Positions 42,722-60,261 of a stretch of 64,000 bases of DNA are shown here, in pieces. The stretch is taken from IMG/VR virus record IMGVR_UViG_3300008261_000001, positions 226,180-290,179 of that record, one strand, 5' to 3'. The notes below the pieces were generated by a model that saw only the letters and a program-made list of their open reading frames with translations, ran no database searches and was not told where the DNA came from. How positions within the stretch are numbered: position 1 is the first letter of the stretch; every line of letters starts with the position of its first letter. The position numbers were made by a program, and so were the translations under genes.

Positions 42722-43393
42722 TTAATAGAAGAGCTTTTTGAGGGCTTGTAGCCCACCAGCTTTCCAAACTTCCCCAGGGTCTTTTCCTCTGTACTTCCAT
42801 TGTACGGATCGGATGCCGATGTCTGTCATTTGCTTGTGTAGCCAAGCTGATTTTTTACGACCTGTTTCATCGTTATCGTAGCAGATATATATAGTGGACA
42901 GAGGCGTGTAAAACTGAGCAATGGTAGCTAGGGTGTTTGAGTCCATACCTGCTCTGAGTGTGGAACACACAGCGTCTGTGGGGGGTATGGATTTCTCGAC
43001 TGCTATAAGGTCAAAAACGCCTTCGACTATCCAAAGGTCGTTTCCCTCCCACAAAGCGTTCAGTGCTTTTTCACTGCCGAGTAGGTAGGGGTTCCATTGG
43101 GATTTTGGTGTTCTGTACTGAAGAACTTTCTTTTGTCCCTCAGCGTCTATGGAACGCACCTCAAGACCGAGTATCTCACCACGGGGGGATGTGATCGGAA
43201 TAATCAGATGGTCTTTGATGCGTTCGCCTAAAGAGCCGAACATGGCTTTGAAGCGTGGGTCTTGGATCTGATCGTGGGGTATCCAAGAGTGAAAGGATAT
43301 TGAAGATTGGCTATCTACACCCCTAGAGGCTAGATAGGGCTTGTAAGCCTCTAGGGGTGAACCGAGTCCTTTTCGTAGCCAACCATCGTCCAT
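42722..43393 (-). CDS. DNA primase catalytic (Toprim) domain protein
   Basis: YLASRG, IIPI, IVEGVFD, CYDNDETG, KDPGE. Confidence 0.88.
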   Translation of the reverse strand: MDDGWLRKGLGSPLEAYKPYLASRGVDSQSSISFHSWIPHDQIQDPRFKAMFGSLGERIKDHLIIPITSPRGEILGLEVRSIDAEGQKKVLQYRTPKSQWNPYLLGSEKALNALWEGNDLWIVEGVFDLIAVEKSIPPTDAVCSTLRAGMDSNTLATIAQFYTPLSTIYICYDNDETGRKKSAWLHKQMTDIGIRSVQWKYRGKDPGEVWKAGGLQALKKLFY

Positions 43394-44607: not shown

Positions 44608-45231
44608 ATGGATTGTGTTGTGGACTATACCCAAGTGCAACCAACCAAGCGTTGGCATTTGGGTGTGTGTACGATTCTTACATTTAACTTTAAGCAGATT
44701 TCACTTAAAAACAAAAAGAAACTAGGGATAGACATAGACAAAAAGCGTGAAGATATAAGACTTCTCTTTTACAAGAGGCAAGCCAAGCAGGTGGCTCGTT
44801 TGGGGCTAGACCCAGAGGATGTACTTCAAGAGGTCTACAAGGGCTTGATTATCCGCAACGAGGGTACTTGCCCTTACGACCCAAAGAAATCTGCCTTCTC
44901 CACCTATGTTGTCATGGTCATGAACTGCGTAGTCATGAACATCGTCAAAAAGCGTAAGCTCTACAACGATAGAGAGGTTGTCGGTGAAGAGGACGATGCC
45001 GCCACCTATAATGTTGCTTCCCATTATCAGAACCAAGACGAAGAGTTATTACTAGAGCAAGTTCGTGGGTCTTTTAACGGAGATTTGCTTAAGGTATATG
45101 ACGCTCTGATGGAGGGTACAAAACACGCCCATATTGCAAACGAGCTTGGTTGGGAGATTCGTAAGGTGAATATGTGCATTAAAGAGATCAGAACGAAGGT
45201 AGCTAACTACTTGGGGCGGTCTGCGGACTAA
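44608..45231 (+). CDS. Phage sigma70/ECF-like sigma factor
   Basis: EDVLQEV..YDPKKSAFSTYV (region 2), HIANELG HTH (region 4). Confidence 0.8.
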   Translation: MDCVVDYTQVQPTKRWHLGVCTILTFNFKQISLKNKKKLGIDIDKKREDIRLLFYKRQAKQVARLGLDPEDVLQEVYKGLIIRNEGTCPYDPKKSAFSTYVVMVMNCVVMNIVKKRKLYNDREVVGEEDDAATYNVASHYQNQDEELLLEQVRGSFNGDLLKVYDALMEGTKHAHIANELGWEIRKVNMCIKEIRTKVANYLGRSAD

Positions 45232-45818
45232 ACAGAGAACTTGTAAAGCCCAAAGACCCTCCTCGAAACAGGTAGGTATCCAAAACCTGGGTCTATAGAA
45301 GTACCTTGTGTGATCTGCTGTCCAAGCTCGTCTATCTTCATGTTAAAAGTAGCCCTCTCTGCTTTATTCGAATCAGACCCTACACCAAAAGTGGAAATCT
45401 CTTCGATATTGTCAGCCCAAGCCATAAGATAAATACTGCCCTCAAAAGGTTCACCCTTAAAGTCGGTTCTAAGCCCGTAAGCGAACACAGGTATCTGTAG
45501 TTCGTCTGCAATACGAGTAAGACCCAAGACTTGGTCTTTACTCAAGAACTGAGCCTCATCCACGAATAAGACTTTGATGGGTTTATCCAATACTGCTAGG
45601 TAGGGACATTCTGAGGAGCTTAAGGATTGAGCCTTCTGTGTGAAGCCGATGCGGGAAGCGACTTTGGATACTTCGTCTCTCTGTGAAGCGACATGAGGCA
45701 CTAAGACCTCGTATGGGATTTCTCGCTCAAAGCATGAGTGAGCCCTCATGATAAGGTTGGCACTCTTACCAGCGTTGACGGTGGAGTAGATGAAGGTGAG
45801 CATCGTTTTTCTTTCCAT
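45228..45818 (-). CDS. tdk: Thymidine kinase (type II), zinc ligands lost
   Basis: YSTVNAGKS, SRIG, VDEAQF, YGLRTDFKGEPFEGS. Confidence 0.92.
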   Translation of the reverse strand: MERKTMLTFIYSTVNAGKSANLIMRAHSCFEREIPYEVLVPHVASQRDEVSKVASRIGFTQKAQSLSSSECPYLAVLDKPIKVLFVDEAQFLSKDQVLGLTRIADELQIPVFAYGLRTDFKGEPFEGSIYLMAWADNIEEISTFGVGSDSNKAERATFNMKIDELGQQITQGTSIDPGFGYLPVSRRVFGLYKFSV

Positions 45819-47069: not shown

Positions 47070-48281
47070 ATGTTTGAGTATGACAGAGAAAAGGGCTTCA
47101 AGACACTTGCGGAGTACAAGCTGTTTGAGGACGGAGAAATCTACATACCACCGCATATATGGAAAGAGATTAAGGATCAGTTCCCTCGTGATGAGGTGAT
47201 ACTACACTTATCCAATCTTTTGAGGGCTATGCCTTTTCCTTTGACGCAGTATTCGGCGGCGGAGGTTCTATCCGATTGGAACAGCTTGAAGAACACCCCT
47301 CAAAATGTCGAGATGACTGAATGGACTTGTCATAGGTTGTTCGACAGTATTCCCCTTCTGTACCGAGGAAAGCCTTGCCTTATCCAATCTAACACGAAGG
47401 GCAGAAAGGTATCCAATCAGTTTACTGAGTCTGTTAGGATGGAGTGTGGTTCAAAAGCATTTCCATCCCCTATTTCGTACTGGACGGAAAACAAGGTCAT
47501 GTATTGGCTCAGATCTCTTTGGACTCTCTTAGACGATAAAGAGGGGTTAAACGGAAGGAGTATTCAACAATGCATCGCCTTAAGTTCTTATGTGGCGAGT
47601 CAGTTTAATCCTAGCACAGCTAAGTGCATTTATGACTTCTTTGGGGCTAAGAAGGTCTTGGACTTATCTATGGGTTGGGGGGATAGACTCGTAGGGTTTC
47701 TAGCTAGTGGTGCGGATAGTTATGTGGGCATAGACCCCAACACTAAGCTCCACACGCCCTATCAGAGCATCTGCGATTGGACAGAGAACAAGGGGGGCTT
47801 GGATAAGCCTAAAACGACTCGGTTCATCTGTTCACCTGCTGAGGAGGCGGACTTATCCAATATGAAGTTCGACTTTGTGTTTACCTCGCCTCCGTACTTC
47901 AACATAGAGAGGTACTCCGAGGATGGAACACAGAGCTGGAAACGCTATAAGCAGTTATCCGCTTGGCATGAGGGCTTTTTGTTCCCGTCTTTGAAGAAGG
48001 CTTGGGACAGCTTAGAGGAGGGCGGTCGGATAGCCATCAACATCGCAGACAGCTTGAGAGATAAGCATAACATCTGTACGCCCATGTTATCCTATATGGA
48101 GTCGATAGGTGCAACTTACGAGGGTGTTATGGGGTATCGTATGTCTAAGCGACCTGGGAACTTTTCTCAGTACACGGATGATATAAAAGAGATCGGTGTG
48201 TTTGGTGAGCCGATATTTATATGGAGTAAGGGGGAAGCCCCTGAGCCCAAGTGGAACCAAGATAACTTCTTTGGAGTCTGA
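47070..48281 (+). CDS. SAM-dependent DNA amino-methyltransferase-fold protein, copy 1
   Basis: VLDLSMGWGDRL (motif I), YVGIDPN, FTSPPYF (motif IV). Confidence 0.88.
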   Translation: MFEYDREKGFKTLAEYKLFEDGEIYIPPHIWKEIKDQFPRDEVILHLSNLLRAMPFPLTQYSAAEVLSDWNSLKNTPQNVEMTEWTCHRLFDSIPLLYRGKPCLIQSNTKGRKVSNQFTESVRMECGSKAFPSPISYWTENKVMYWLRSLWTLLDDKEGLNGRSIQQCIALSSYVASQFNPSTAKCIYDFFGAKKVLDLSMGWGDRLVGFLASGADSYVGIDPNTKLHTPYQSICDWTENKGGLDKPKTTRFICSPAEEADLSNMKFDFVFTSPPYFNIERYSEDGTQSWKRYKQLSAWHEGFLFPSLKKAWDSLEEGGRIAINIADSLRDKHNICTPMLSYMESIGATYEGVMGYRMSKRPGNFSQYTDDIKEIGVFGEPIFIWSKGEAPEPKWNQDNFFGV

Positions 48282-48991
48282 TGATGTACCATATAACAGC
48301 AAAAAATTGTGCAGAGGCATGGGTGAAAGCCACACAAGATATTCTCGACAAAGGGGAGGATATGGGGGGGTTGTACGAGATATTAAATATGGGGATAGAG
48401 ATAACCTCTTCTGAAGTGTGTCCTTTGTTTGACGAGGAGTTTCGTAAGGTTTTTGGGGACGAGAGAATAGACTATGCGAAGTCTGTGACTTTCGTGCGTC
48501 CTGAGCCTAATGTGCTTTTCCCTCAAATGATGGATTATAGACAGAACCAAGAAGGGAAATGGACTAATAGTTATTGGGGTCGTATGATCTCTTGGAACGG
48601 TGGATATAATCAGATAGAGCAGGCGATAAAGAGGCTTCAACAAAACAAGCAGTCTAAAACCATCGTCATTGGTGTTTTCGATCCTCAGACGGATGGGAAA
48701 AAACAAATGGGTGGTATGCCCTGCTTACTGACAATAGACTTAAAGCCTAGAGGTGGGAAGCTCAATCTCACAGCAAACTTTAGAAGCCAAGCGGTATCTA
48801 AGTCTGGCTATGCCGATTATATGGCGTTAGTAGAGTTGTGTGATTTCTTGTGCAAAGAGAGCGGTTGTCTCGACTTTGGACTTGTCACTTCATTCGCTCA
48901 CTCTTGCCATGTACGCACCGAAAACAACGAGCTGAAAAACTCAAAGCGACTTATGGAGCAGTATGGAAACCGAATGGGTGAACTCGTTTAA
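48281..48991 (+). CDS. Thymidylate-synthase-family enzyme, dCMP-hydroxymethylase-like
   Basis: YWGR, MPCL (catalytic Cys), FRSQ, GYAD (Asp at the specificity position), HSCHV. Confidence 0.8.
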   Translation: MMYHITAKNCAEAWVKATQDILDKGEDMGGLYEILNMGIEITSSEVCPLFDEEFRKVFGDERIDYAKSVTFVRPEPNVLFPQMMDYRQNQEGKWTNSYWGRMISWNGGYNQIEQAIKRLQQNKQSKTIVIGVFDPQTDGKKQMGGMPCLLTIDLKPRGGKLNLTANFRSQAVSKSGYADYMALVELCDFLCKESGCLDFGLVTSFAHSCHVRTENNELKNSKRLMEQYGNRMGELV

Positions 48992-49883
48992 GACACTCAT
49001 CTATGAGTCGATAAAATCGTTACCTGACGAGGTGAGCTTGTCTTTTAGCGGAGGTATTGACTCCTCTATGATCTTATTCACTATGATTGATTTAGGGAAG
49101 CCCCCCAAAGAACTCATCACATTTGAGATAGAGGGAGAGCCGTCTAAAGATTTAGAATATGCTAAAAAGATTGCACAGCATTACGATCTGCCTTTGAAGG
49201 TTGCGAAGATCCCATCTTCTCCGAGTCGTGACGACTTATTAGGGGAAGTTAAAGAAGTTATTAAGACCACACGCACCACGAGGAACATTGAAACTCAAGT
49301 GTGCTACGCATATTCCTACATGATACCCCTTATTACAACAGAGCATCTGGTCACAGGGTTTTACGAAGACATACTGTTCGCCACGAATGCAAACATCTCT
49401 TCAAAGTACAGCAAACACCTTAAAGGTTTAATGTCCAAAGAGGATTTTGATGATGAATATAAACTGATTAGAAAACAAGTATTTGAGGGGAAATACAAAT
49501 CTGGTGCGGAACACAACTACCTTGTGATTATGAGGTACTTGGAGGCGAAAGGCATTAAAGTAGAATGTCCTTATAATACGGATTGTATATACAATTTATT
49601 TCAATCCCTCACTTTTAAACAAACGAACTATAATCCCAATACAGGTAAGAAACATAAAAAGTGGTTCATCACAGAAGAAACGCATAAAGATTTTTTTGCT
49701 CTGTTCAATAACCATAAAAACATCAATAATATGCACACAACAGGTAAAGATGGCGGGCTTAAAGGTCTACATAGGCGTGTGTTATTAACAGGGACATCTT
49801 TTAAGGACACAAGGGCTATTTATAACGAGGTACTGAAAGAAATTGAGTTTGAAGAAAAGGCTATGTTCGATGTTAAACTTTAA
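48963..49883 (+). CDS. Asparagine-synthetase-like PP-loop ATP pyrophosphatase, no glutaminase domain
   Basis: SFSGGIDSS, DLEYAKKIA, VTGFYEDILF, ECPY, KWF. Confidence 0.8.
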   Translation: METEWVNSFKTLIYESIKSLPDEVSLSFSGGIDSSMILFTMIDLGKPPKELITFEIEGEPSKDLEYAKKIAQHYDLPLKVAKIPSSPSRDDLLGEVKEVIKTTRTTRNIETQVCYAYSYMIPLITTEHLVTGFYEDILFATNANISSKYSKHLKGLMSKEDFDDEYKLIRKQVFEGKYKSGAEHNYLVIMRYLEAKGIKVECPYNTDCIYNLFQSLTFKQTNYNPNTGKKHKKWFITEETHKDFFALFNNHKNINNMHTTGKDGGLKGLHRRVLLTGTSFKDTRAIYNEVLKEIEFEEKAMFDVKL

Positions 49884-50703
49884 TACGCCTTTAGAGACTT
49901 ACACTGTGGCTCACAAAAACATAGATGTGAAGCGAGATGACTTGCTTAATGGAGACCTCGATCTGCCTCCGTGGGCTAAACTTGAAGGGGTTCGCAGACT
50001 GCTCGAATCGGATTACTATAAGAAGGATAAACCGATTGTGCATCTGACCGTTAGGGGGAGTTACACAGGGTGGGTGTTGTCTTATTGGGGGAAACAAATG
50101 GGGTACGACATAAAGATTGCTTACCCTAACACAAAAAACTACGGACAAGTTATGCTCGATAAGATCACCCAGTATGGCGGAGAACTTATCCCTCTTAAAC
50201 ACAACATGGTAGCTGTTCTTTCGGCACAAACTAAAAAAATGGCTTCTGAAAATGATTGGCAGATGAGCCCAGACGCTTTTAATCATCCGATCTATATAGA
50301 CTATTGGACACAACGCTCGACTGAGTTTTTCAAAGAAAACGAGTACGATACTCTTGTCGTACAAGGAGGGAGTGGAGTCACATCTGTTGGACTCATCAAA
50401 GGGTTTTTAGGTGTGGATTACATCTCAGGGTCTCTATTTGAATCGGATTACGGAAAGAAGAAAATCGTCCTCGTGGCTACCTCAAGTGTTAAGACCGTCA
50501 CAAACGCTCTGATCTCTAATCTAGGTGCTGTGCCTTCTTGTCTCAAGGTCTATAAGTCTGAGTACGACTTTTACGATGAAATGGAACACCTAACGACCCC
50601 ATTCCCTTGCAACCCTTATTGGGACAAGAAAGCGTGGGGCTGGATTCAAGATAACCCAGATAAGATGAAAGGTCGTACCCTGTTTTGGAATCTAGGAGCT
50701 TAA
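49870..50703 (+). CDS. PLP-dependent fold-type-II enzyme
   Basis: NTPLE, VKRDDL, AKL (Schiff-base Lys), GGSGVTSVG, YWDKKAW, LFWNLG. Confidence 0.82.
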   Translation: MLNFNTPLETYTVAHKNIDVKRDDLLNGDLDLPPWAKLEGVRRLLESDYYKKDKPIVHLTVRGSYTGWVLSYWGKQMGYDIKIAYPNTKNYGQVMLDKITQYGGELIPLKHNMVAVLSAQTKKMASENDWQMSPDAFNHPIYIDYWTQRSTEFFKENEYDTLVVQGGSGVTSVGLIKGFLGVDYISGSLFESDYGKKKIVLVATSSVKTVTNALISNLGAVPSCLKVYKSEYDFYDEMEHLTTPFPCNPYWDKKAWGWIQDNPDKMKGRTLFWNLGA

Positions 50704-50724
50704 ACCTTTTTTCGGGGTCTAGTT

Positions 50725-51945
50725 ATGTTTTTTGATTATGAGCGAACAAAGTTATCTTCTCTAGATGACTATGAACTGACGACCGACTCTAAGATTTCTA
50801 TTCCTCCCCACATATGGCGTGAGATTACAACGACTTTCAGTAAGAAAGATATCATTGAACATCTGTCCAATCTTATTGAAGTGGGGAAACTCCCTTTTCC
50901 GCTGAGGGAGTACTCATCAGCGGGGTTGGATCTTGACTTCAAGATGCTGAAAAACGAGGATTGCTTAGTAAAGCTAGGTGATTGGGAGTGCCTAAGGACA
51001 ATCCCCAACCAAGAGCTGAGTTATCGTGGGCGTAGGTGTTATTTTAACCCTTCTTCTAATGGATTAAGCGTTTCGGATAACTTCACTCAGCTTGAAAGGA
51101 TGGAGTGTTCTCACTTTGAACATAAGAGTCCAATGAGGGAATGGACGAGGGAAGGTTGTAGGTCAAAGACACGCTATATGCTGAGGGTCTTATGGACACT
51201 TAACGAGAAGGACGCTTTAGAGAACGGTGTTAGCAATAAGCAGTTAAGAGACTGCATACGGCTTGGAAACTACCAAGCAAGTCAGTTCAAGCCCTCATGT
51301 GCTAAGACGATTTATGACTTCTTTGGGGCTAAGAAGGTCTTGGACTTTTCAGCAGGTTGGGGGGACAGACTCGTTGGCTTCCTAGCGTCTAGTGCCGAGA
51401 GCTATGTGGGCATAGATCCTAACTCAAAACTAACGGATAAGTATAGAGCCATATCTAGCTTTTGCTCTACGGATAAACAGACAAGTTTCATCTGCTCCCC
51501 CGCAGAAGACGCTGACTTATCCAATATGAGATTCGACTTTGTGTTTACCTCCCCCCCTTACTTCAACATCGAGAGGTATTCAGAGGAGAGTACTCAGTCT
51601 TGGAAACGCTATAAGACGGAGAGCGACTGGTTGGAGTTTTTCTTGTTGGTCGCTTTAAAGAAATCTTGGGACAGCTTAGAAGACGGTGGGAGGATAGCTA
51701 TCAACATCGCGGATAAGGGTCATTCAAGGACAGATGTCATTTCTTCTATCTGTACGCCTATGCTGTCTTATATGGAGTCTTTAGGTGCGGTGTTTGAGGG
51801 GGTGATAGGATATAGGATGAATAAAAGACCTGGTGACAGAATGGGTTCTGTAGGTGGTTCGGTGTTCGGTGAACCTATATTCGTGTGGTCTAAAGGTGTT
51901 GCCACCGAACCCAAGTGGAAGCAAGACAACTTCTTTGGGATCTGA
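50725..51945 (+). CDS. SAM-dependent DNA amino-methyltransferase-fold protein, copy 2
   Basis: VLDFSAGWGDRL, FTSPPYF; collinear paralogue of 47070..48281. Confidence 0.88.
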   Translation: MFFDYERTKLSSLDDYELTTDSKISIPPHIWREITTTFSKKDIIEHLSNLIEVGKLPFPLREYSSAGLDLDFKMLKNEDCLVKLGDWECLRTIPNQELSYRGRRCYFNPSSNGLSVSDNFTQLERMECSHFEHKSPMREWTREGCRSKTRYMLRVLWTLNEKDALENGVSNKQLRDCIRLGNYQASQFKPSCAKTIYDFFGAKKVLDFSAGWGDRLVGFLASSAESYVGIDPNSKLTDKYRAISSFCSTDKQTSFICSPAEDADLSNMRFDFVFTSPPYFNIERYSEESTQSWKRYKTESDWLEFFLLVALKKSWDSLEDGGRIAINIADKGHSRTDVISSICTPMLSYMESLGAVFEGVIGYRMNKRPGDRMGSVGGSVFGEPIFVWSKGVATEPKWKQDNFFGI

Positions 51946-51949
51946 GCGT

Positions 51950-52273
51950 TTAACTATTCACGATGAAGTTAAACTGAGGCAACATCTGAGCGATCTTTTG
52001 AAGGCAATCGCTATCCGACCCACAAGAGACATAAATCTCTTTCATAGATCCAGCGTTTGAAGTTTCGGTCTTGTACCCTGCCTTCATGATAGTTCTCTCA
52101 ATAGTCGTAGCATCCCATGACGCTACGATGAGATTTAAGTCGTTCATACCCTCAAAGTTCACAAGCACAGGAGCTTTGACCTTATGGATGTTTCGTGAGG
52201 CAACCTTACGACCACCTTCGAGGGCGGCGAGGCGGACTTCAAGACTTCTTAATACTTCACTTGCTGTTCTCAT
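51950..52273 (-). CDS. Small protein with MRTASEVLR leader
   Basis: Leader and RBS shared with 2390..3505. Confidence 0.65.
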   Translation of the reverse strand: MRTASEVLRSLEVRLAALEGGRKVASRNIHKVKAPVLVNFEGMNDLNLIVASWDATTIERTIMKAGYKTETSNAGSMKEIYVSCGSDSDCLQKIAQMLPQFNFIVNS

Positions 52274-54435: not shown

Positions 54436-55143
54436 ATGCCATACATCATCGCAAGGCGTTCTGAGATTCAAAATGGCTCGGTGCAGATCACGGACTTGTT
54501 CCCTAATCAGAGCCAAGCCAACCCCATGATAGACCCTGCACCTCAAGGTCCTTTCTATGTAAGAGTTCCCAATATTGGGGATACAGGTAAGTATCGTCCT
54601 GTGTTGGTGACTTTAGGTGATGGCTCGATTGTGTTTGGTCGTGAGTCTCATGGCTTAACATCTTACATCATCAAAAACATAGACGCATCTCCAGCGGGCG
54701 GTGACACCACCGTAACCGTCACACAAGCAGAAGAAATCGCTTCTGCCCTTTTAACAAGGGCGAGGGGTGGTTTGGCACTCGCTGAGGCGAATATCAACGC
54801 GGTCTTGGTGGCGACTCTAGGTGCAGGAGCCGCGATAGATGCAGGTGACTCTACTGCGAGCGTAGATGTTATCCTTCAGATCCTTTCTGGTGAGTCTTAT
54901 GTTGTGCCTTATGGCTACACCGTTCAGACAGCCGGTGGTGACCATGTGGTTGTCATTTCGGATAGTAGCCTCGGCTCTACCGTTAGAAGGCTCGTGGAGA
55001 GGGATACCTCGTGGCAAGTATCTTTCAATGAGGGTTGCCTTGCAGGTTTAGTGGCGGCTCGTCCTAATGGCTTTGCAGGCAATACAGCCACCACCCCCCT
55101 CGTTGCTGTCTATAACGCTGACGGCACCATCTACAACGGATAA
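54436..55143 (+). CDS. Putative virion protein, paralogue 1 of 3
   Basis: QITDLFPNQSQANP..DPAPQGP ... VYNADG. Confidence 0.6.
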   Translation: MPYIIARRSEIQNGSVQITDLFPNQSQANPMIDPAPQGPFYVRVPNIGDTGKYRPVLVTLGDGSIVFGRESHGLTSYIIKNIDASPAGGDTTVTVTQAEEIASALLTRARGGLALAEANINAVLVATLGAGAAIDAGDSTASVDVILQILSGESYVVPYGYTVQTAGGDHVVVISDSSLGSTVRRLVERDTSWQVSFNEGCLAGLVAARPNGFAGNTATTPLVAVYNADGTIYNG

Positions 55144-55154
55144 GGAGTCTAACC

Positions 55155-55850
55155 ATGCCTTTCGTATGCACACCTAGAGTCACCAACTCAACGGATAGTG
55201 GCGTTGCACTTCAGATTACTGACTTGTTCCCCCACAAGACTCAGTCCAACGCTGTCATTACCCCCCGCTTTCAAGGTCCTCGCTACCTTTACGCTCATGG
55301 CAGAGCTTTGACTCAGACCGTAGCCCTCAATGGTGCTTTCAACACGACCGCAGCATTTACGGGTCTAGCGGCTTATATTCTCGCCACCATCGAGAACACC
55401 GCCGCCGCAGGCGTGTGCTTAACTGCCGCACAAGCGAATAACATCGCTTCGGACATCCTCTCTCTCATGGAAGCGGGAGAGGCTCTTACTGTATCCGCTA
55501 TCAACGCTGAGATTAGTGACCGCACGGGTGGTGGAGCCAACGGTATTGGTCTAGGGGACTCGACCGCTACCGTCTTGCAGATCCTTCAGATTGTGTCAGG
55601 CTACAAGGTATTCACCCTCCCCAACAACACCTCTGTAGGTGGTGTCGGTGGTGCCTTCGAGGCACCTGCTGTGGGTGGGTTCTTTGCTGACCCTGCGGAT
55701 GTAGCGAGCCTTTGGACCTCGTTCGATTCGAGCTTCTACCTCTCCGCTCGTAGTGGACAGCTAAAGAAAGCTCAGACCCGCGTGGACGCTAACGGAAACT
55801 CGGCTCCCTTCGTTGTCTGTTATGCAGATGACGGCACACTCATTCAGTAA
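55155..55850 (+). CDS. Putative virion protein, paralogue 2 of 3
   Basis: QITDLFP..QSN...QGPRY ... YADDG. Confidence 0.6.
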   Translation: MPFVCTPRVTNSTDSGVALQITDLFPHKTQSNAVITPRFQGPRYLYAHGRALTQTVALNGAFNTTAAFTGLAAYILATIENTAAAGVCLTAAQANNIASDILSLMEAGEALTVSAINAEISDRTGGGANGIGLGDSTATVLQILQIVSGYKVFTLPNNTSVGGVGGAFEAPAVGGFFADPADVASLWTSFDSSFYLSARSGQLKKAQTRVDANGNSAPFVVCYADDGTLIQ

Positions 55851-58893: not shown

Positions 58894-60261
58894 ATGAGTG
58901 CATCCACATCTTACGCTAATAAGACAACTAAAGCCCTAAAAGCCCTCGCTTTATCCCTAAGGCATTACAAGAAGCCATTACCATCATCGGATAAAGAAGA
59001 GCAAAGGGTTCACATCAAGGGCATATTGGATAAGATTAAAGAACTGCCGAATGTGGTTTTATTTTTAGATTCACACATAGGGAAAACACAAGTGAAGCCC
59101 GTTAAGTCGGGTCGGGCAGGTGCTGTAAGGCTACTTGCTCAGTACTTGGGTGGGAAGTTTTCTATTGTAGAGATGGAGGAGGCGGCGGTCGGTTTTTTCC
59201 AAAAGAACTACGAAGCTAGGGCTATTCATAGGGGGCAAGCTCCACTAAATGAAACGATACCCGAGAAGATTAAAGCGTTCCTACCACCTAAAATAGTGAT
59301 TAAATTGGATAACGATGGGTACATAAAGGAAATAACCGATATGTACGACAACGAGTCGTATGGGCTTTTAGAAAAAATAAACGCACAACAAAAGATACTG
59401 CGGGAGTACAAAACCATACAGAGGAAAGTATGGAATGGATTCGATTCAAAAGACGAGGCAGTTAAAAACTTATCCATTATTTTGGGTGTTATAATAGAGA
59501 CAGGGATTAGACCTGGGAGTAGGTCTAATGGGATAAAAGAGATACTGAGTGGTAAAGAGGTGAGAAAAGAGACTTTTGGTGCGGTCTCGTTGAAGAGAAA
59601 GCACTTGGTTTTATCCAAAGACGAAATCAAGCTAGAGTTCGAAGGAAAAAAGGGGACTATCAATAGGGCGACTATCAAGGATAAAAGACTTCTGATGGCT
59701 CTCAAAGGTGTCTGTGCGGAGAGGCGAGGGGGAGATCTGTACTTGTTTCCAGATGTGGAATATGAGGACTTAGCCAAGTTCTTCAAAAAGAACTTCGAGG
59801 GGTTGAAGATAACGGACTTTAGGAAGCTAAGAGCCACTAAAGAAGTTTACGATGGGTTAAAGGCAGAACAAGCTCGTTTGTTTAAGACCATTAAGGGGTT
59901 CGTTGGGTTAGAAGTAAAGAAGCAAGAGGAGATGGTGATTGACGCTATAGCCGATACGCTTAAGAGCGTACACTCAAAGGCTCAAACGGCACTCAGCCAT
60001 GAGTCCTCCAAAACCACTGAAAAGTCTTATATCAACCCACAGATCTTGTTGTCGTTTTTATCCAATGGTGGGCTTTTACCCTCTATCGAAGAGTGTGTCT
60101 TAGAGGGGAAAACACGACTTGTATTCGACATACAATCATTTCTTAAAAACTCTAAGCGTGTCGCCTCGGTTGGGGGGGTAAAATACCCTATAATGACTAC
60201 ATCTAAGGGACTCGACAGAAACCTATCGGATATCTTGTTCGATCTGATTGAGTGCCTCTAG
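58894..60261 (+). CDS. DNA topoisomerase IB (poxvirus/bacterial-type catalytic domain)
   Basis: ETGIRPG (R), FGAVSLKRKH, FEGKKG (K), DFRK (R), LSHE (H), KSYINP (Y). Confidence 0.85.
   Translation: MSASTSYANKTTKALKALALSLRHYKKPLPSSDKEEQRVHIKGILDKIKELPNVVLFLDSHIGKTQVKPVKSGRAGAVRLLAQYLGGKFSIVEMEEAAVGFFQKNYEARAIHRGQAPLNETIPEKIKAFLPPKIVIKLDNDGYIKEITDMYDNESYGLLEKINAQQKILREYKTIQRKVWNGFDSKDEAVKNLSIILGVIIETGIRPGSRSNGIKEILSGKEVRKETFGAVSLKRKHLVLSKDEIKLEFEGKKGTINRATIKDKRLLMALKGVCAERRGGDLYLFPDVEYEDLAKFFKKNFEGLKITDFRKLRATKEVYDGLKAEQARLFKTIKGFVGLEVKKQEEMVIDAIADTLKSVHSKAQTALSHESSKTTEKSYINPQILLSFLSNGGLLPSIEECVLEGKTRLVFDIQSFLKNSKRVASVGGVKYPIMTTSKGLDRNLSDILFDLIECL

What the first reader, a model, noticed from the sequence alone, without database searches (positions are those of the whole stretch)
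47070..51945. Candidate novel DNA base-hypermodification operon: MTase, dCMP-type TS homologue, AsnB-like ligase, PLP enzyme, MTase
Seen: five co-oriented genes, the first four overlapping. Known: TS-family hydroxymethylases make 5-hydroxymethyl pyrimidine nucleotides; in hmU phages PLP fold-II enzymes decarboxylate amino acids attached to the base, with attachment by a kinase plus amino-acid:DNA transferase; AsnB-like PP-loop enzymes activate a substrate with ATP for attack by an amine. Here the TS homologue looks cytosine-specific, no kinase/transferase or glycosyltransferase is visible, and a glutaminase-less PP-loop ligase takes their place. Inference: an undescribed route to an amino-acid- or amine-substituted cytosine, in which the TS enzyme makes the handle, the ligase attaches a group, the PLP enzyme trims or supplies it, and the MTase-fold proteins methylate or transfer an aminoalkyl group.
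Basis: partly seen in the sequence, partly recalled or inferred. Interest (0 to 1): 0.85.

Follow-up and report, generated by a model that had tools for sequence, protein, structure and literature searches.

The report
Phage cytosine hypermodification gene module
An uncultured freshwater jumbo phage carries five tightly packed genes that most likely build an undescribed, amino-acid-derived decoration on the cytosines of its DNA, using an unusual thymidylate-synthase relative whose chemistry cannot yet be predicted.

Summary
The middle three recur together. The thymidylate-synthase (TS) relative has the catalytic Cys and the Asn177-to-Asp change that selects dCMP. It lacks the folate-anchoring Asp169 (Ala here, Arg in relatives) and the Asn169 mark of 5-hydroxy-dCMP synthases. 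It defines a rare clade: about 13 representatives among 1.84 billion proteins. The PP-loop protein is a glutaminase-less asparagine-synthetase domain related to CmoY, the phage ligase that amidates 5-carboxymethylcytosine in DNA. The PLP protein is a homologue of phage M6 gp52, a decarboxylase of amino acids attached to DNA bases.

In 11 independent phage contexts, the TS relative always sits beside or is fused to a gp52-type PLP enzyme (7) or a B12-type radical SAM enzyme (4), never both. A CmoY-type ligase is present in 8 and an SPPY methyltransferase-like domain in 7.

The flanking methyltransferase-like genes belong to a large viral family that also forms arrays without the trio, so their role in the pathway is uncertain.

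Verdict: a new variant of phage DNA hypermodification acting on cytosine C5. The product and the order of steps are inferred, not shown. The AsnB-like ligase step has a 2025 precedent. A plain hydroxymethyl handle is doubtful.

The parts
47070..48281 (+). Methyltransferase-like protein A (403 aa). It has a novel N-terminal domain of about 170 aa and a class I SAM-dependent transferase domain. Motif I (VLDLSMGWGDR) precedes motif IV (TSPPYF).
   Evidence: Pfam N6_N4_Mtase is weak and PHROG 12517/498 match. It is 55% identical to gene 5. The AF2 model has pLDDT 90.8. Against PDB, Foldseek matches only generic class I methyltransferases for the C-terminal half. Full-length matches go to viral proteins, several named N4-cytosine methyltransferases. 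More than 800 homologous clusters exist.
48281..48991 (+). Atypical thymidylate-synthase-family enzyme (236 aa), predicted to modify C5 of dCMP. It has Cys148 (E. coli C146), Arg168-Ser169 (R166-S167), Asp179 (N177 to D), Ala171 (D169 to A) and Gly145 (L143 to G).
   Evidence: Pfam PF00303 scores above its cut-off. NCBIfam archaeal-type TS matches at 1.3e-20. The best PDB relatives are MilA CMP hydroxymethylase and 9iqu/9iqc. The clade has about 13 representatives in 1.84e9 proteins, with a score gap to the next tier.
48963..49883 (+). PP-loop ATP pyrophosphatase of the asparagine-synthetase synthetase-domain type, without a glutaminase domain (306 aa; SFSGGIDSS motif). It is a predicted ATP-dependent carboxylate-amine (amide) ligase of the CmoY kind.
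   Evidence: Pfam and NCBIfam matches. The AF2 model has pLDDT 90.9. Foldseek top hits are ASNS, AsnB, beta-lactam synthetase and carbapenam synthetase. It is 27% identical (E 8e-15) over the full length to the ligase of the CmoA/CmoX cluster of Staphylococcus phage vB-SscS-F1. hhalign to S-B43 CmoY gives probability 96%.
49843..50703 (+). Fold-type II PLP-dependent enzyme (286 aa from the TTG; the likely start is the ATG at 49870). It is a homologue of phage M6 gp52, with Lys46 aligned to the gp52 Schiff-base Lys36.
   Evidence: PHROG 7093 matches at 2.7e-23. tblastn hits in cultured phages go only to M6/YuA-like and related phages. The alignment shows a conserved Lys and a C-terminal PFPCNP...KAW.W...FWN motif. 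The gp52 function comes from PMC8989533.
50725..51945 (+). Methyltransferase-like protein B (406 aa), a paralogue of gene 1 with the same motifs.
   Evidence: It has a weak CmoB match confined to the SAM-binding region (NCBIfam 2e-5). In the tree it groups with paralogues of contig L012, which has no trio in the 21 kb seen.

Best explanation
The locus is a DNA base-hypermodification module aimed at C5 of cytosine. Its core is the middle trio of genes, and it sits inside a pair of SAM-dependent amino-methyltransferase-like genes.

Step 1 (supported at residue level by homology): the TS-family enzyme adds its catalytic Cys to C6 of dCMP. Asp at position 177 selects cytosine, and C5 becomes able to attack an electrophile. 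The folate-anchoring Asp169 is lost in the whole clade. Every relative is adjacent to, or fused with, a gp52-type PLP enzyme or a B12-type radical SAM enzyme. I therefore think the product is not plain 5-hydroxymethyl-dCMP. It is more likely a C5 side chain that carries, or soon acquires, a carboxylate or amino-acid-like group (inferred).

Step 2 (inferred from homology to CmoY): the glutaminase-less AsnB-type ligase adenylates a side-chain carboxylate and joins it to an amine by an amide bond. As for CmoY, this probably happens on the polymer after replication.

Step 3 (inferred from homology to M6 gp52): the PLP enzyme forms a Schiff base with a free alpha-amine of the appended amino acid and removes its alpha-carboxylate, leaving a terminal, positively charged amine. 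For steps 2 and 3 to coexist, the joined amino acid must be linked through a side-chain group. Examples are a diamino acid joined through its distal amine, or Asp/Glu joined through the side-chain carboxylate.

Step 4 (least certain): the two SPPY-motif methyltransferase-like proteins either N-methylate an amino group (a side-chain amine or N4/N6 of bases) or transfer a larger SAM-derived group.

The likely biological role is protection of phage DNA from host nucleases.

Probabilities: the trio is a cytosine hypermodification cassette, about 0.7. The particular order ligase-then-decarboxylase, about 0.3.
For: TS-like enzyme:
- C146, R166, S167, H207 and D177 are invariant in 40 family clusters, and position 169 is A/R/T/P, never D or N.
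- All full-length high-scoring representatives (200 bits or more) carry the signature Cys146-Arg166-Ser167-[Ala/Arg]169-Asp177. The next tier falls below about 150 bits and is mostly classical, with Asp169 followed by Asn177 or Asp177.
- It was aligned directly with T4 gp42, E. coli ThyA and RB69 gp48.

Ligase:
- It has the AsnB synthetase fold.
- It is homologous to ligases of bona fide CmoA/CmoX clusters.
- In sister modules, the ligase next to the TS-like gene is 34% identical to the characterised S-B43 CmoY (L019) or 41% identical to PaBG gp180 (L020).

PLP enzyme:
- It belongs to the gp52 family and keeps the catalytic Lys.
- The gp52 activity is described in PMC8989533.

Module behaviour:
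- Between the window and contigs L004/L010, identities are TS 87%, PLP 78% and ligase 57-61%, while flanking genes show no similarity.
- Across 11 contexts, the PLP or radical SAM partner is present 11 of 11 times and the two are mutually exclusive. The ligase is present in 8 of 11 and the methyltransferase-like domain in 7 of 11.
- Fusions exist: TS-like::radical SAM (P0183) and radical SAM::methyltransferase-like (L007).
- A PdxH-like PLP-forming oxidase lies directly after the PLP gene in L020.
- The module usually lies among replication genes such as DnaB, primase and polymerase.
Against: - No chemical data of any kind are available, and no cultured phage carries this TS-like clade.
- The window ligase is only distantly related to CmoY (25% over 142 aa by BLAST).
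- CmoA and CmoX, which make CmoY's carboxylate substrate, are absent from the scanned neighbourhood. The source of any carboxylate is therefore unexplained.
- Ligase and decarboxylase would compete for the same carboxylate unless a bifunctional amino acid is used. That is an assumption.
- Two contexts (L021, L025) show the TS-like and PLP genes without a detectable ligase, so the ligase is not obligatory.
- The gp52 family could perform beta-replacement rather than decarboxylation in this setting.
- Only 64 kb of a 290-kb genome is visible. A dNMP kinase, a dCTPase or further pathway genes were neither seen nor excluded.
Confidence: 0.7

Rival explanations
1. Scope rival. Only the trio (TS-like, ligase, PLP) is the hypermodification cassette. 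The two flanking 400-aa genes are ordinary sequence-specific DNA amino-methyltransferases (N4-methylcytosine or N6-methyladenine) belonging to an anti-restriction array into which the cassette was inserted.
For: - The family has more than 800 clusters against 14 for the ligase.
- Arrays of 2 to at least 11 paralogues occur after DnaB in related contigs that show no TS-like gene or ligase in the stretch seen (L012, L014).
- Orthologues of the methyltransferases that flank the trio in L004 are present in L012, and the window's A and B copies are not positional orthologues of those in L004.
- All copies keep the SAM motif I and the SPPY motif IV typical of amino-methyltransferases.
- Automatic names in BFVD and the ESM Atlas are 'N4-cytosine methyltransferase'.
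- L019, L021 and L025 have no such gene within view.
Against: - A divergent domain of the same family sits next to the TS-like gene again in distant modules (L020, L024, L027). In L007 it is fused to the radical SAM enzyme.
- In the arrays, the paralogues are interleaved with enzymes that would have no substrate on a methyl group: PALP paralogues, a 2OG oxygenase and a GNAT.
Confidence: 0.4
2. Carboxymethyl route, modelled on tRNA cmo5U. The TS-like enzyme makes 5-hydroxy- or 5-hydroxymethyl-dCMP. A methyltransferase-like protein uses host carboxy-SAM to carboxymethylate that hydroxyl (or N4). The CmoY-like ligase amidates the new carboxylate, and the PLP enzyme trims the appended amino acid.
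For: - Weak CmoB similarity of the methyltransferase-like proteins (PDB 4p7c; NCBIfam CmoB 2e-5; Foldseek CmoB entries).
- The TS-like clade shares Gln168 with the verified 5-hydroxy-dCMP synthase RB69 gp48, and scores similarly against 9iqu/9iqc and MilA.
- The ligases of sister modules are close to CmoY, whose substrate is a C5 carboxymethyl group.
Against: - The CmoB matches cover only the generic SAM-binding half.
- No CmoA is seen in the window.
- The diagnostic Asn169 of 5-hydroxy-dCMP synthases is absent.
- L019 has a CmoY-like ligase but no methyltransferase-like gene in view.
- The CmoX study found no N6/N4 carboxymethyltransferases associated with CmoA (PMC12783734).
Confidence: 0.15
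3. Aminocarboxypropyl route. The methyltransferase-like proteins transfer the 3-amino-3-carboxypropyl group of SAM to a base. The PLP enzyme decarboxylates it to aminopropyl or the ligase amidates it, and the TS-like enzyme provides the acceptor or a second modification.
For: - Every tailoring enzyme found beside this methyltransferase family would have a substrate in such a group: gp52-like PLP, amide ligase, GNAT and an Asp/Arg-hydroxylase-like oxygenase.
- Fusion to radical SAM.
- A 699-aa Satyrvirus protein named 'glutathione synthase' aligns over its full length to the model (unverified).
- Precedent recalled from memory, not tested here: MccD plus the MccE PLP domain aminopropylate microcin C.
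Against: - Nothing in the sequence distinguishes methyl transfer from aminocarboxypropyl transfer.
- The SPPY motif is the classical amino-methyltransferase motif.
- The model does not explain why the TS-like gene is the constant partner of the PLP or radical SAM enzyme when no methyltransferase-like gene is present (L019, L021, L025).
Confidence: 0.12
4. No hypermodification. The genes are unrelated auxiliary metabolic genes: a thymidylate synthase for dTMP, an asparagine synthetase, a threonine/serine dehydratase and DNA methyltransferases. Alternatively, they modify tRNA.
For: Database names of the nearest families, and the weak similarity of the PP-loop region to TilS and QueC.
Against: - Asp177 excludes dUMP as the preferred substrate.
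- The ligase lacks a glutaminase domain, and its closest relatives sit in CmoA/CmoX DNA-modification clusters.
- The PLP enzyme's only homologues in cultured phages are the gp52 family.
- Overlapping genes, fusions and 11 recurrent contexts argue for one pathway.
Confidence: 0.05

Closest known systems
CmoA/CmoX/CmoY system of Synechococcus phage S-B43 (5-carboxymethylcytosine and its glycine amide; PMC12783734)
   Same: It targets C5 of cytosine. It uses a glutaminase-less AsnB-like, ATP-dependent amide ligase as the tailoring step. The window ligase is homologous to it (hhalign probability 96%). Ligases of sister modules are 34-41% identical to CmoY or PaBG gp180. It also sits next to replication genes.
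   Different: There is no CmoA and no C5-methyltransferase homologue here. A TS-family enzyme that acts on the mononucleotide takes their place. A PLP or radical SAM enzyme is always present, which is not a described part of the Cmo system. The nature of the carboxylate handle is unknown.
Thymidine hypermodification pathways of phages M6 and ViI (5-hmdU, 5-HMUDK kinase, amino-acid:DNA transferase, radical SAM gp53, PLP decarboxylase gp52/gp226; PMC8989533)
   Same: It starts with a pre-replicative TS-family enzyme and continues with amino-acid-derived tailoring. The PLP enzyme is a true homologue of gp52 with the same catalytic Lys. Radical SAM enzymes occur in the sister form.
   Different: The predicted base is cytosine rather than uracil (Asp177). 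No kinase or aGPT-Pplase transferase is present. The radical SAM enzymes are B12-type (PhpK/BchE-like), not spore-photoproduct-lyase-like, and show no BLAST similarity to M6 gp53. PLP and radical SAM enzymes are alternatives here rather than consecutive.
dCMP/CMP hydroxymethylases (T4 gp42, MilA) and flavin-dependent 5-hydroxy-dCMP synthases (RB69 gp48; PMC13326640)
   Same: They share the TS fold, catalytic Cys146, Arg166-Ser167 and Asp177. Sizes are similar (230-250 aa), and the C-terminal folate-closing tail is absent. Gln168 is shared with RB69 gp48.
   Different: Position 169 is Ala or Arg, not Asp (hydroxymethylases) or Asn (hydroxylases). Position 143 is Gly or Lys, not Asp/Glu. A clade-specific FGDERIDY motif is present. 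The invariable partners are PLP or radical SAM enzymes rather than glycosyltransferases.
Viral beta/gamma-class amino-methyltransferases (N4-cytosine / N6-adenine)
   Same: Class I SAM fold, motif I and the SPPY motif IV. The family is restricted to viruses.
   Different: The roughly 170-aa N-terminal domain has no match in PDB. Pfam scores fall below the gathering threshold. The family shows unusual tandem expansion and sits beside, or is fused to, tailoring enzymes. The transferred group and the target are untested.

Membership tests
Thymidylate synthase superfamily (Pfam PF00303) | Profile match above the curated cut-off | tested here: met
   27.7 bits against a cut-off of 24.3. PHROG 160 matches at 5e-12.
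Thymidylate synthase superfamily | Catalytic Cys146 and the phosphate/pyrimidine-binding Arg166-Ser167 | tested here: met
   Cys148 and Arg168-Ser169 are invariant in 40 family clusters.
dCMP-specific TS homologues | Asp instead of Asn at E. coli position 177 | tested here: met
   Asp179 aligns with T4 gp42 Asp179 and RB69 gp48 Asp, and is invariant in the family.
Folate-dependent dCMP hydroxymethylase (T4 gp42 / MilA type) | Asp169 (pterin anchor) retained, and an acidic residue at position 143 | tested here: not met
   Position 169 is Ala (Arg, Thr or Pro in relatives). Position 143 is Gly (Lys or Arg in relatives).
5-hydroxy-dCMP synthase (RB69 gp48 type) | The diagnostic Asp169-to-Asn change (PMC13326640) | tested here: not met
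   Ala in the window. Asn does not occur at this position in any member of the clade.
AsnB-type synthetase domain / CmoY-type amide ligase | PP-loop motif SGGxDS and the AsnB synthetase fold, without a glutaminase domain | tested here: met
   The SFSGGIDSS motif. Foldseek to ASNS, AsnB and beta-lactam synthetase gives E 3e-9 and TM 0.62. The protein is 306 aa and matches only the synthetase half.
CmoY-type amide ligase | Sequence homology to the characterised S-B43 CmoY | tested here: met
   hhalign probability 96%, E 2e-9 over 183 columns. BLAST gives 25% over 142 aa. The relationship is distant.
CmoA/CmoX/CmoY system | Co-occurrence with carboxy-SAM synthase CmoA and the C5-methyltransferase homologue CmoX | tested here: not met
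   Neither was found among the scanned window ORFs or in any of the 11 TS-like contexts. Both are present in vB-SscS-F1, PaBG and S-B43.
CmoY-type amide ligase | ATP-dependent amide formation on a DNA-borne carboxylate | not testable with these tools
   This needs an enzyme assay.
M6 gp52 / ViI gp226 PLP decarboxylase family | Fold-type II PLP enzyme homologous to gp52 that keeps the Schiff-base Lys | tested here: met
   PHROG 7093 at 2.7e-23. It is 27% identical at E 7e-22 in a pairwise comparison. Lys46 aligns with gp52 Lys36, and a C-terminal motif is shared. Pfam PALP alone falls below its cut-off (31.5 against 35).
Thymidine-type hypermodification cluster | 5-hmU DNA kinase (P-loop) and aGPT-Pplase amino-acid:DNA transferase | tested here: not met
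   No such domains were found among the scanned window ORFs or in the related loci.
N6/N4 DNA amino-methyltransferases | SAM-binding motif I and the catalytic (D/N/S)PP(Y/F) motif IV on a class I fold | tested here: met
   D198, G202, G204 and S273-P-P-Y276 are invariant in 42 sequences. Class I fold.
N6/N4 DNA amino-methyltransferases | Pfam PF01555 above the gathering score, and methyl transfer to DNA | tested here: inconclusive
   24.5 and 25.0 bits against 26.7. Activity and the transferred group were not testable.

The most novel reading that the evidence does not exclude
The Asp169-less TS clade catalyses a reaction new to the thymidylate-synthase superfamily. It would attach a non-folate, carboxylate- or amino-acid-bearing carbon unit, supplied or matured by its obligatory PLP or radical SAM partner, directly to C5 of dCMP. 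This would give an amino-acid-substituted cytosine without the kinase and transferase steps of the known thymidine pathways. In addition, the expanded SPPY methyltransferase-like family may transfer groups larger than methyl (carboxymethyl or aminocarboxypropyl) to DNA.
Probability: 0.2. Interest if true: 0.9.

Novelty: new variant of a known kind. Interest (0 to 1): 0.72.

Why it matters
Phage DNA hypermodifications decide the outcome of restriction, CRISPR and other nuclease defences, and they have supplied tools for epigenetic sequencing and DNA labelling.

Most of the known chemistry starts from a hydroxymethyl group, a 5-hydroxyl group or, since 2025, a carboxymethyl group. This module combines one enzyme from each of three separately described pathways around a TS-family clade with a different active-site signature. 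It probably encodes a cytosine derivative not yet seen, and possibly a fourth reaction type for the TS fold.

The phage is common. The cluster is near-identical in at least 20 freshwater, lagoon and drinking-water metagenomes from 12 studies. Sister modules occur in T4-like and other phages. The base would therefore be environmentally widespread.

The module is small enough (3-5 genes) to be tested directly by heterologous expression.

Tried and rejected
- Nucleotide search of cultured phages with the cluster: no match.
- tblastn of the TS-like protein: only distant TS homologues at 22-25% identity, so no cultured phage has this clade.
- PP-loop protein as TilS, QueC or LarE: only the PP-loop region matches, and the whole-model fold is AsnB-like.
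- Methyltransferase-like protein as CmoB: the matches are limited to the SAM-binding half and were not accepted as membership.
- The 264-aa gene after the PLP gene in L021 as a hidden ligase: hhalign probability 0.1%.
- Unknown neighbours (window 173-aa and 191-aa ORFs; L007 179 aa; L024 447 aa; L027 395 aa): no family and no mutual similarity.
- PALP genes of L012: only marginally related to gp52 (E 0.002-0.009), so they were not counted as gp52-type.
- Reads: every run that holds the phage (X1-X20) is kept only as assembled contigs, so no base-calling signal of modification could be read. The RNA run of the same sample does not hold the locus.
- Promoter and terminator scan: no more sites than in shuffled sequence.
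- Literature searches found no paper describing this gene combination.

Full report
**What is there**

The window is the last 64 kb of a 290-kb viral contig, IMGVR_UViG_3300008261_000001. It carries a baseplate and tail-fibre block with giant ORFs, so this is a jumbo tailed phage. Near-identical sequence is present in at least 20 freshwater, lake, lagoon and drinking-water metagenomes from 12 studies.

The overlaps are 1, 29 and 41 nt, or 14 nt if the PLP gene starts at the ATG at 49870 as in relative L010. A 21-nt gap follows. Contigs from four independent studies cover the stretch without indels or joints and bridge the gene junctions.

**Gene 2, the TS relative**

- It passes the Pfam cut-off. 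Its best solved relatives are MilA CMP hydroxymethylase and the 234-238-aa entries 9iqu/9iqc.
- I aligned it with E. coli ThyA, T4 gp42 and RB69 gp48. It keeps Cys146, Arg166, Ser167 and His207. It has Asp at position 177, the switch from dUMP to dCMP cited in PMC8670742 and PMC13326640.
- Position 169 is Ala. It is Asp in folate-dependent enzymes and Asn in all tested 5-hydroxy-dCMP synthases (PMC13326640). Position 143, acidic in hydroxymethylases, is Gly.
- This is a clade property. In 40 clusters, position 169 is A/R/T/P and position 177 is always D.
- A profile search of 1.84 billion representatives gave about 13 full-length members at 200 bits or more, all with the signature Cys146-Arg166-Ser167-[Ala/Arg]169-Asp177. 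Scores then drop to a next tier that is mostly classical, with Asp169.
- Cytosine specificity is therefore supported. The product (hydroxymethyl, hydroxyl or something else) cannot be read from the sequence.

**Gene 3, the PP-loop protein**

- It has the SGGxDS motif.
- A confident model (pLDDT 90.9) matches the synthetase domain of asparagine synthetases, beta-lactam synthetase and carbapenam synthetase over its whole length. All of these adenylate a carboxylate. There is no glutaminase domain.
- Its nearest relative in cultured phages lies in Staphylococcus phage vB-SscS-F1 between a CmoA (TIGR00740, 9e-49) and a C5-methyltransferase. This is the CmoA/CmoX/CmoY arrangement. In that system, CmoY ligates glycine to 5-carboxymethylcytosine in DNA (PMC12783734).
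- A profile of the window family matches S-B43 CmoY itself at 96% probability.

**Gene 4, the PLP enzyme**

- It matches PHROG 7093 over its full length.
- Among cultured phages it hits only M6/YuA-like, Bordetella, Sphaerotilus and Stenotrophomonas phages. That is the family of M6 gp52, which decarboxylates an amino acid attached to thymine in DNA (PMC8989533).
- The Schiff-base Lys and a C-terminal motif are conserved.

**Genes 1 and 5, the methyltransferase-like proteins**

- They are 55% identical paralogues. Motif I precedes an invariant TSPPYF motif IV.
- The model (pLDDT 90.8) matches only generic class I methyltransferases in PDB, and only through its C-terminal half.
- It matches viral proteins over its full length, several of them named N4-cytosine methyltransferases.
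- The family is large, with more than 800 clusters.

**Comparative evidence**

The ligase family is rare: 14 clusters in 5.8 billion proteins.

I collected 11 independent contexts of the TS-like clade:

| Context | Gene order |
|---|---|
| Window | MT-TS-ligase-PLP-MT |
| L004-6 | MT-MT-MT-TS-ligase-PLP-MT |
| L010-11 | DnaB-MT-MT-TS-ligase-PLP-MT |
| L020 | MT(489 aa)-TS-ligase-PLP-PdxH-like |
| L019 | TS-PLP-ligase |
| L021 | TS-PLP-unknown |
| L025 (a T4-like phage) | TS-PLP, 0.4 kb from the contig start |
| L007-9 | ligase-179 aa-TS-radical SAM::MT fusion |
| L024 | ParB-like-MT-TS-447 aa-ligase-radical SAM |
| L027 | MT-ligase-395 aa-TS::radical SAM fusion |
| Contig of P0172 | 297 aa-TS-radical SAM |

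- Every context has either a gp52-type PLP enzyme (7) or a B12-type radical SAM enzyme (4), never both.
- The ligase is present in 8 contexts and the MT-like domain in 7.
- Between the window and L004/L010, the cluster is 57-87% identical while flanking genes show no similarity. It therefore behaves as a module.
- The ligases were recruited from different CmoY subgroups. L019's is 34% identical to S-B43 CmoY and L020's is 41% identical to PaBG gp180. This argues that the ligase job here is CmoY-like.

**What the methyltransferase-like genes are doing is open**

- In a tree, the paralogues form orthogroups shared by L004, L010 and L012. L012 carries at least 11 copies in 21 kb with no trio in view. 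The window's two copies are not positional orthologues of those flanking the trio in L004. This favours independent DNA methyltransferases with the trio inserted among them.
- Against that, divergent members sit next to the TS-like gene in distant modules, and one is fused to the radical SAM enzyme.
- In the arrays, they are interleaved with PALP paralogues, a 2OG oxygenase and a GNAT. None of these would have anything to do on a methyl group.

**Mechanism**

Shown by homology: a Cys-dependent C5-activating enzyme for dCMP, a carboxylate-adenylating amide ligase and a Schiff-base-forming PLP enzyme of a DNA-acting family.

Inferred: the side chain built on C5 carries a carboxylate. The ligase joins it to an amine. 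The PLP enzyme then removes the alpha-carboxylate of the appended amino acid, leaving an amine. This requires linkage through a side-chain group.

Three alternatives remain open and are listed as rivals: a cmo5U-like carboxymethyl route, an aminocarboxypropyl route, and a non-folate electrophile for the TS-like enzyme. The loss of Asp169 and the TS::radical SAM fusion make me doubt a plain hydroxymethyl handle.

**Comparison and novelty**

The module shares one enzyme family each with three described systems:
- the Cmo system (ligase);
- the M6/ViI thymidine pathways (PLP, and radical SAM as a class);
- the T4/RB69 cytosine pathways (the TS homologue).

It lacks the defining partners of each: CmoA/CmoX, kinase/transferase and glycosyltransferases. 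Six literature searches found no description of this combination. The CmoX paper states that no N6/N4 carboxymethyltransferases were found.

I rate it a new variant of a known kind, namely phage DNA hypermodification gene clusters. It contains a TS clade that may hide new chemistry.

Noticed in passing
window 58894-60261 (+): A 455-aa protein with a eukaryotic-type topoisomerase IB catalytic core (Pfam PF01028, 1.8e-10). A 451-aa counterpart lies in related contig L014 near its DNA polymerase.
   Followed up: no
window 52242-52273 (5' end of minus-strand ORF 51950-52273): In all four metagenome runs, contigs break on both sides of this 30-nt stretch. It is therefore a short repeat shared with other loci, probably a conserved N-terminus of a multi-copy small gene family.
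   Followed up: partly
window 54436-55143 and 55155-55850 (+): Tandem paralogues (31% identity) with no family match. The whole 52.8-58 kb stretch downstream of the module is unannotatable apart from a zinc-ribbon protein.
   Followed up: no
window 13714-40640 (+): A baseplate and tail-fibre block with ORFs of 1100, 2451, 1066, 1862 and 1722 aa. Only the first two have PHROG matches.
   Followed up: no
window 44608-45231 (+) and 45228-45818 (-): A sigma-factor-like gene and a thymidine kinase lie just upstream of the module. A Toprim-domain gene lies at 42722-43393 (-).
   Followed up: no
L012 1-21206 (GCA_001757045.1 contig MDTC01012631.1): At least 11 paralogues of the 400-aa methyltransferase-like gene lie within 21 kb around DnaB. 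They are interleaved with two PALP paralogues and a 693-aa Asp/Arg-hydroxylase-like oxygenase. This is a second, different candidate modification island.
   Followed up: partly
L014 7323-12680: An island after DnaB holds two methyltransferase-like paralogues, a Dam-like gene, a 254-aa N6_N4 methyltransferase, a 383-aa P-loop/GNAT protein and a T5orf172 (GIY-YIG-like) gene.
   Followed up: no
L027 7088-9118 (protein P0183) and L007 10278-12539: Two natural fusions: TS-like::radical SAM (676 aa) and radical SAM::methyltransferase-like (753 aa). They link three of the module's families.
   Followed up: yes
L020 10402-11013: A PdxH-like pyridoxine/pyridoxamine 5'-phosphate oxidase gene lies directly after the PLP gene. 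It looks like a phage-encoded supply of the cofactor.
   Followed up: partly
proteins P0201, P0210, P0220 (next-tier TS homologues): TS-family domains fused to MtrA plus a pterin-binding domain, to NUDIX, or to a class I methyltransferase. These are outside the clade studied here.
   Followed up: no
BFVD A0A3G5AD75 (Satyrvirus, 699 aa): A giant-virus protein named 'glutathione synthase' aligns to the whole methyltransferase-like model (TM 0.74). If the remainder is an ATP-grasp ligase, this would be another methyltransferase-ligase link. The sequence could not be fetched.
   Followed up: no
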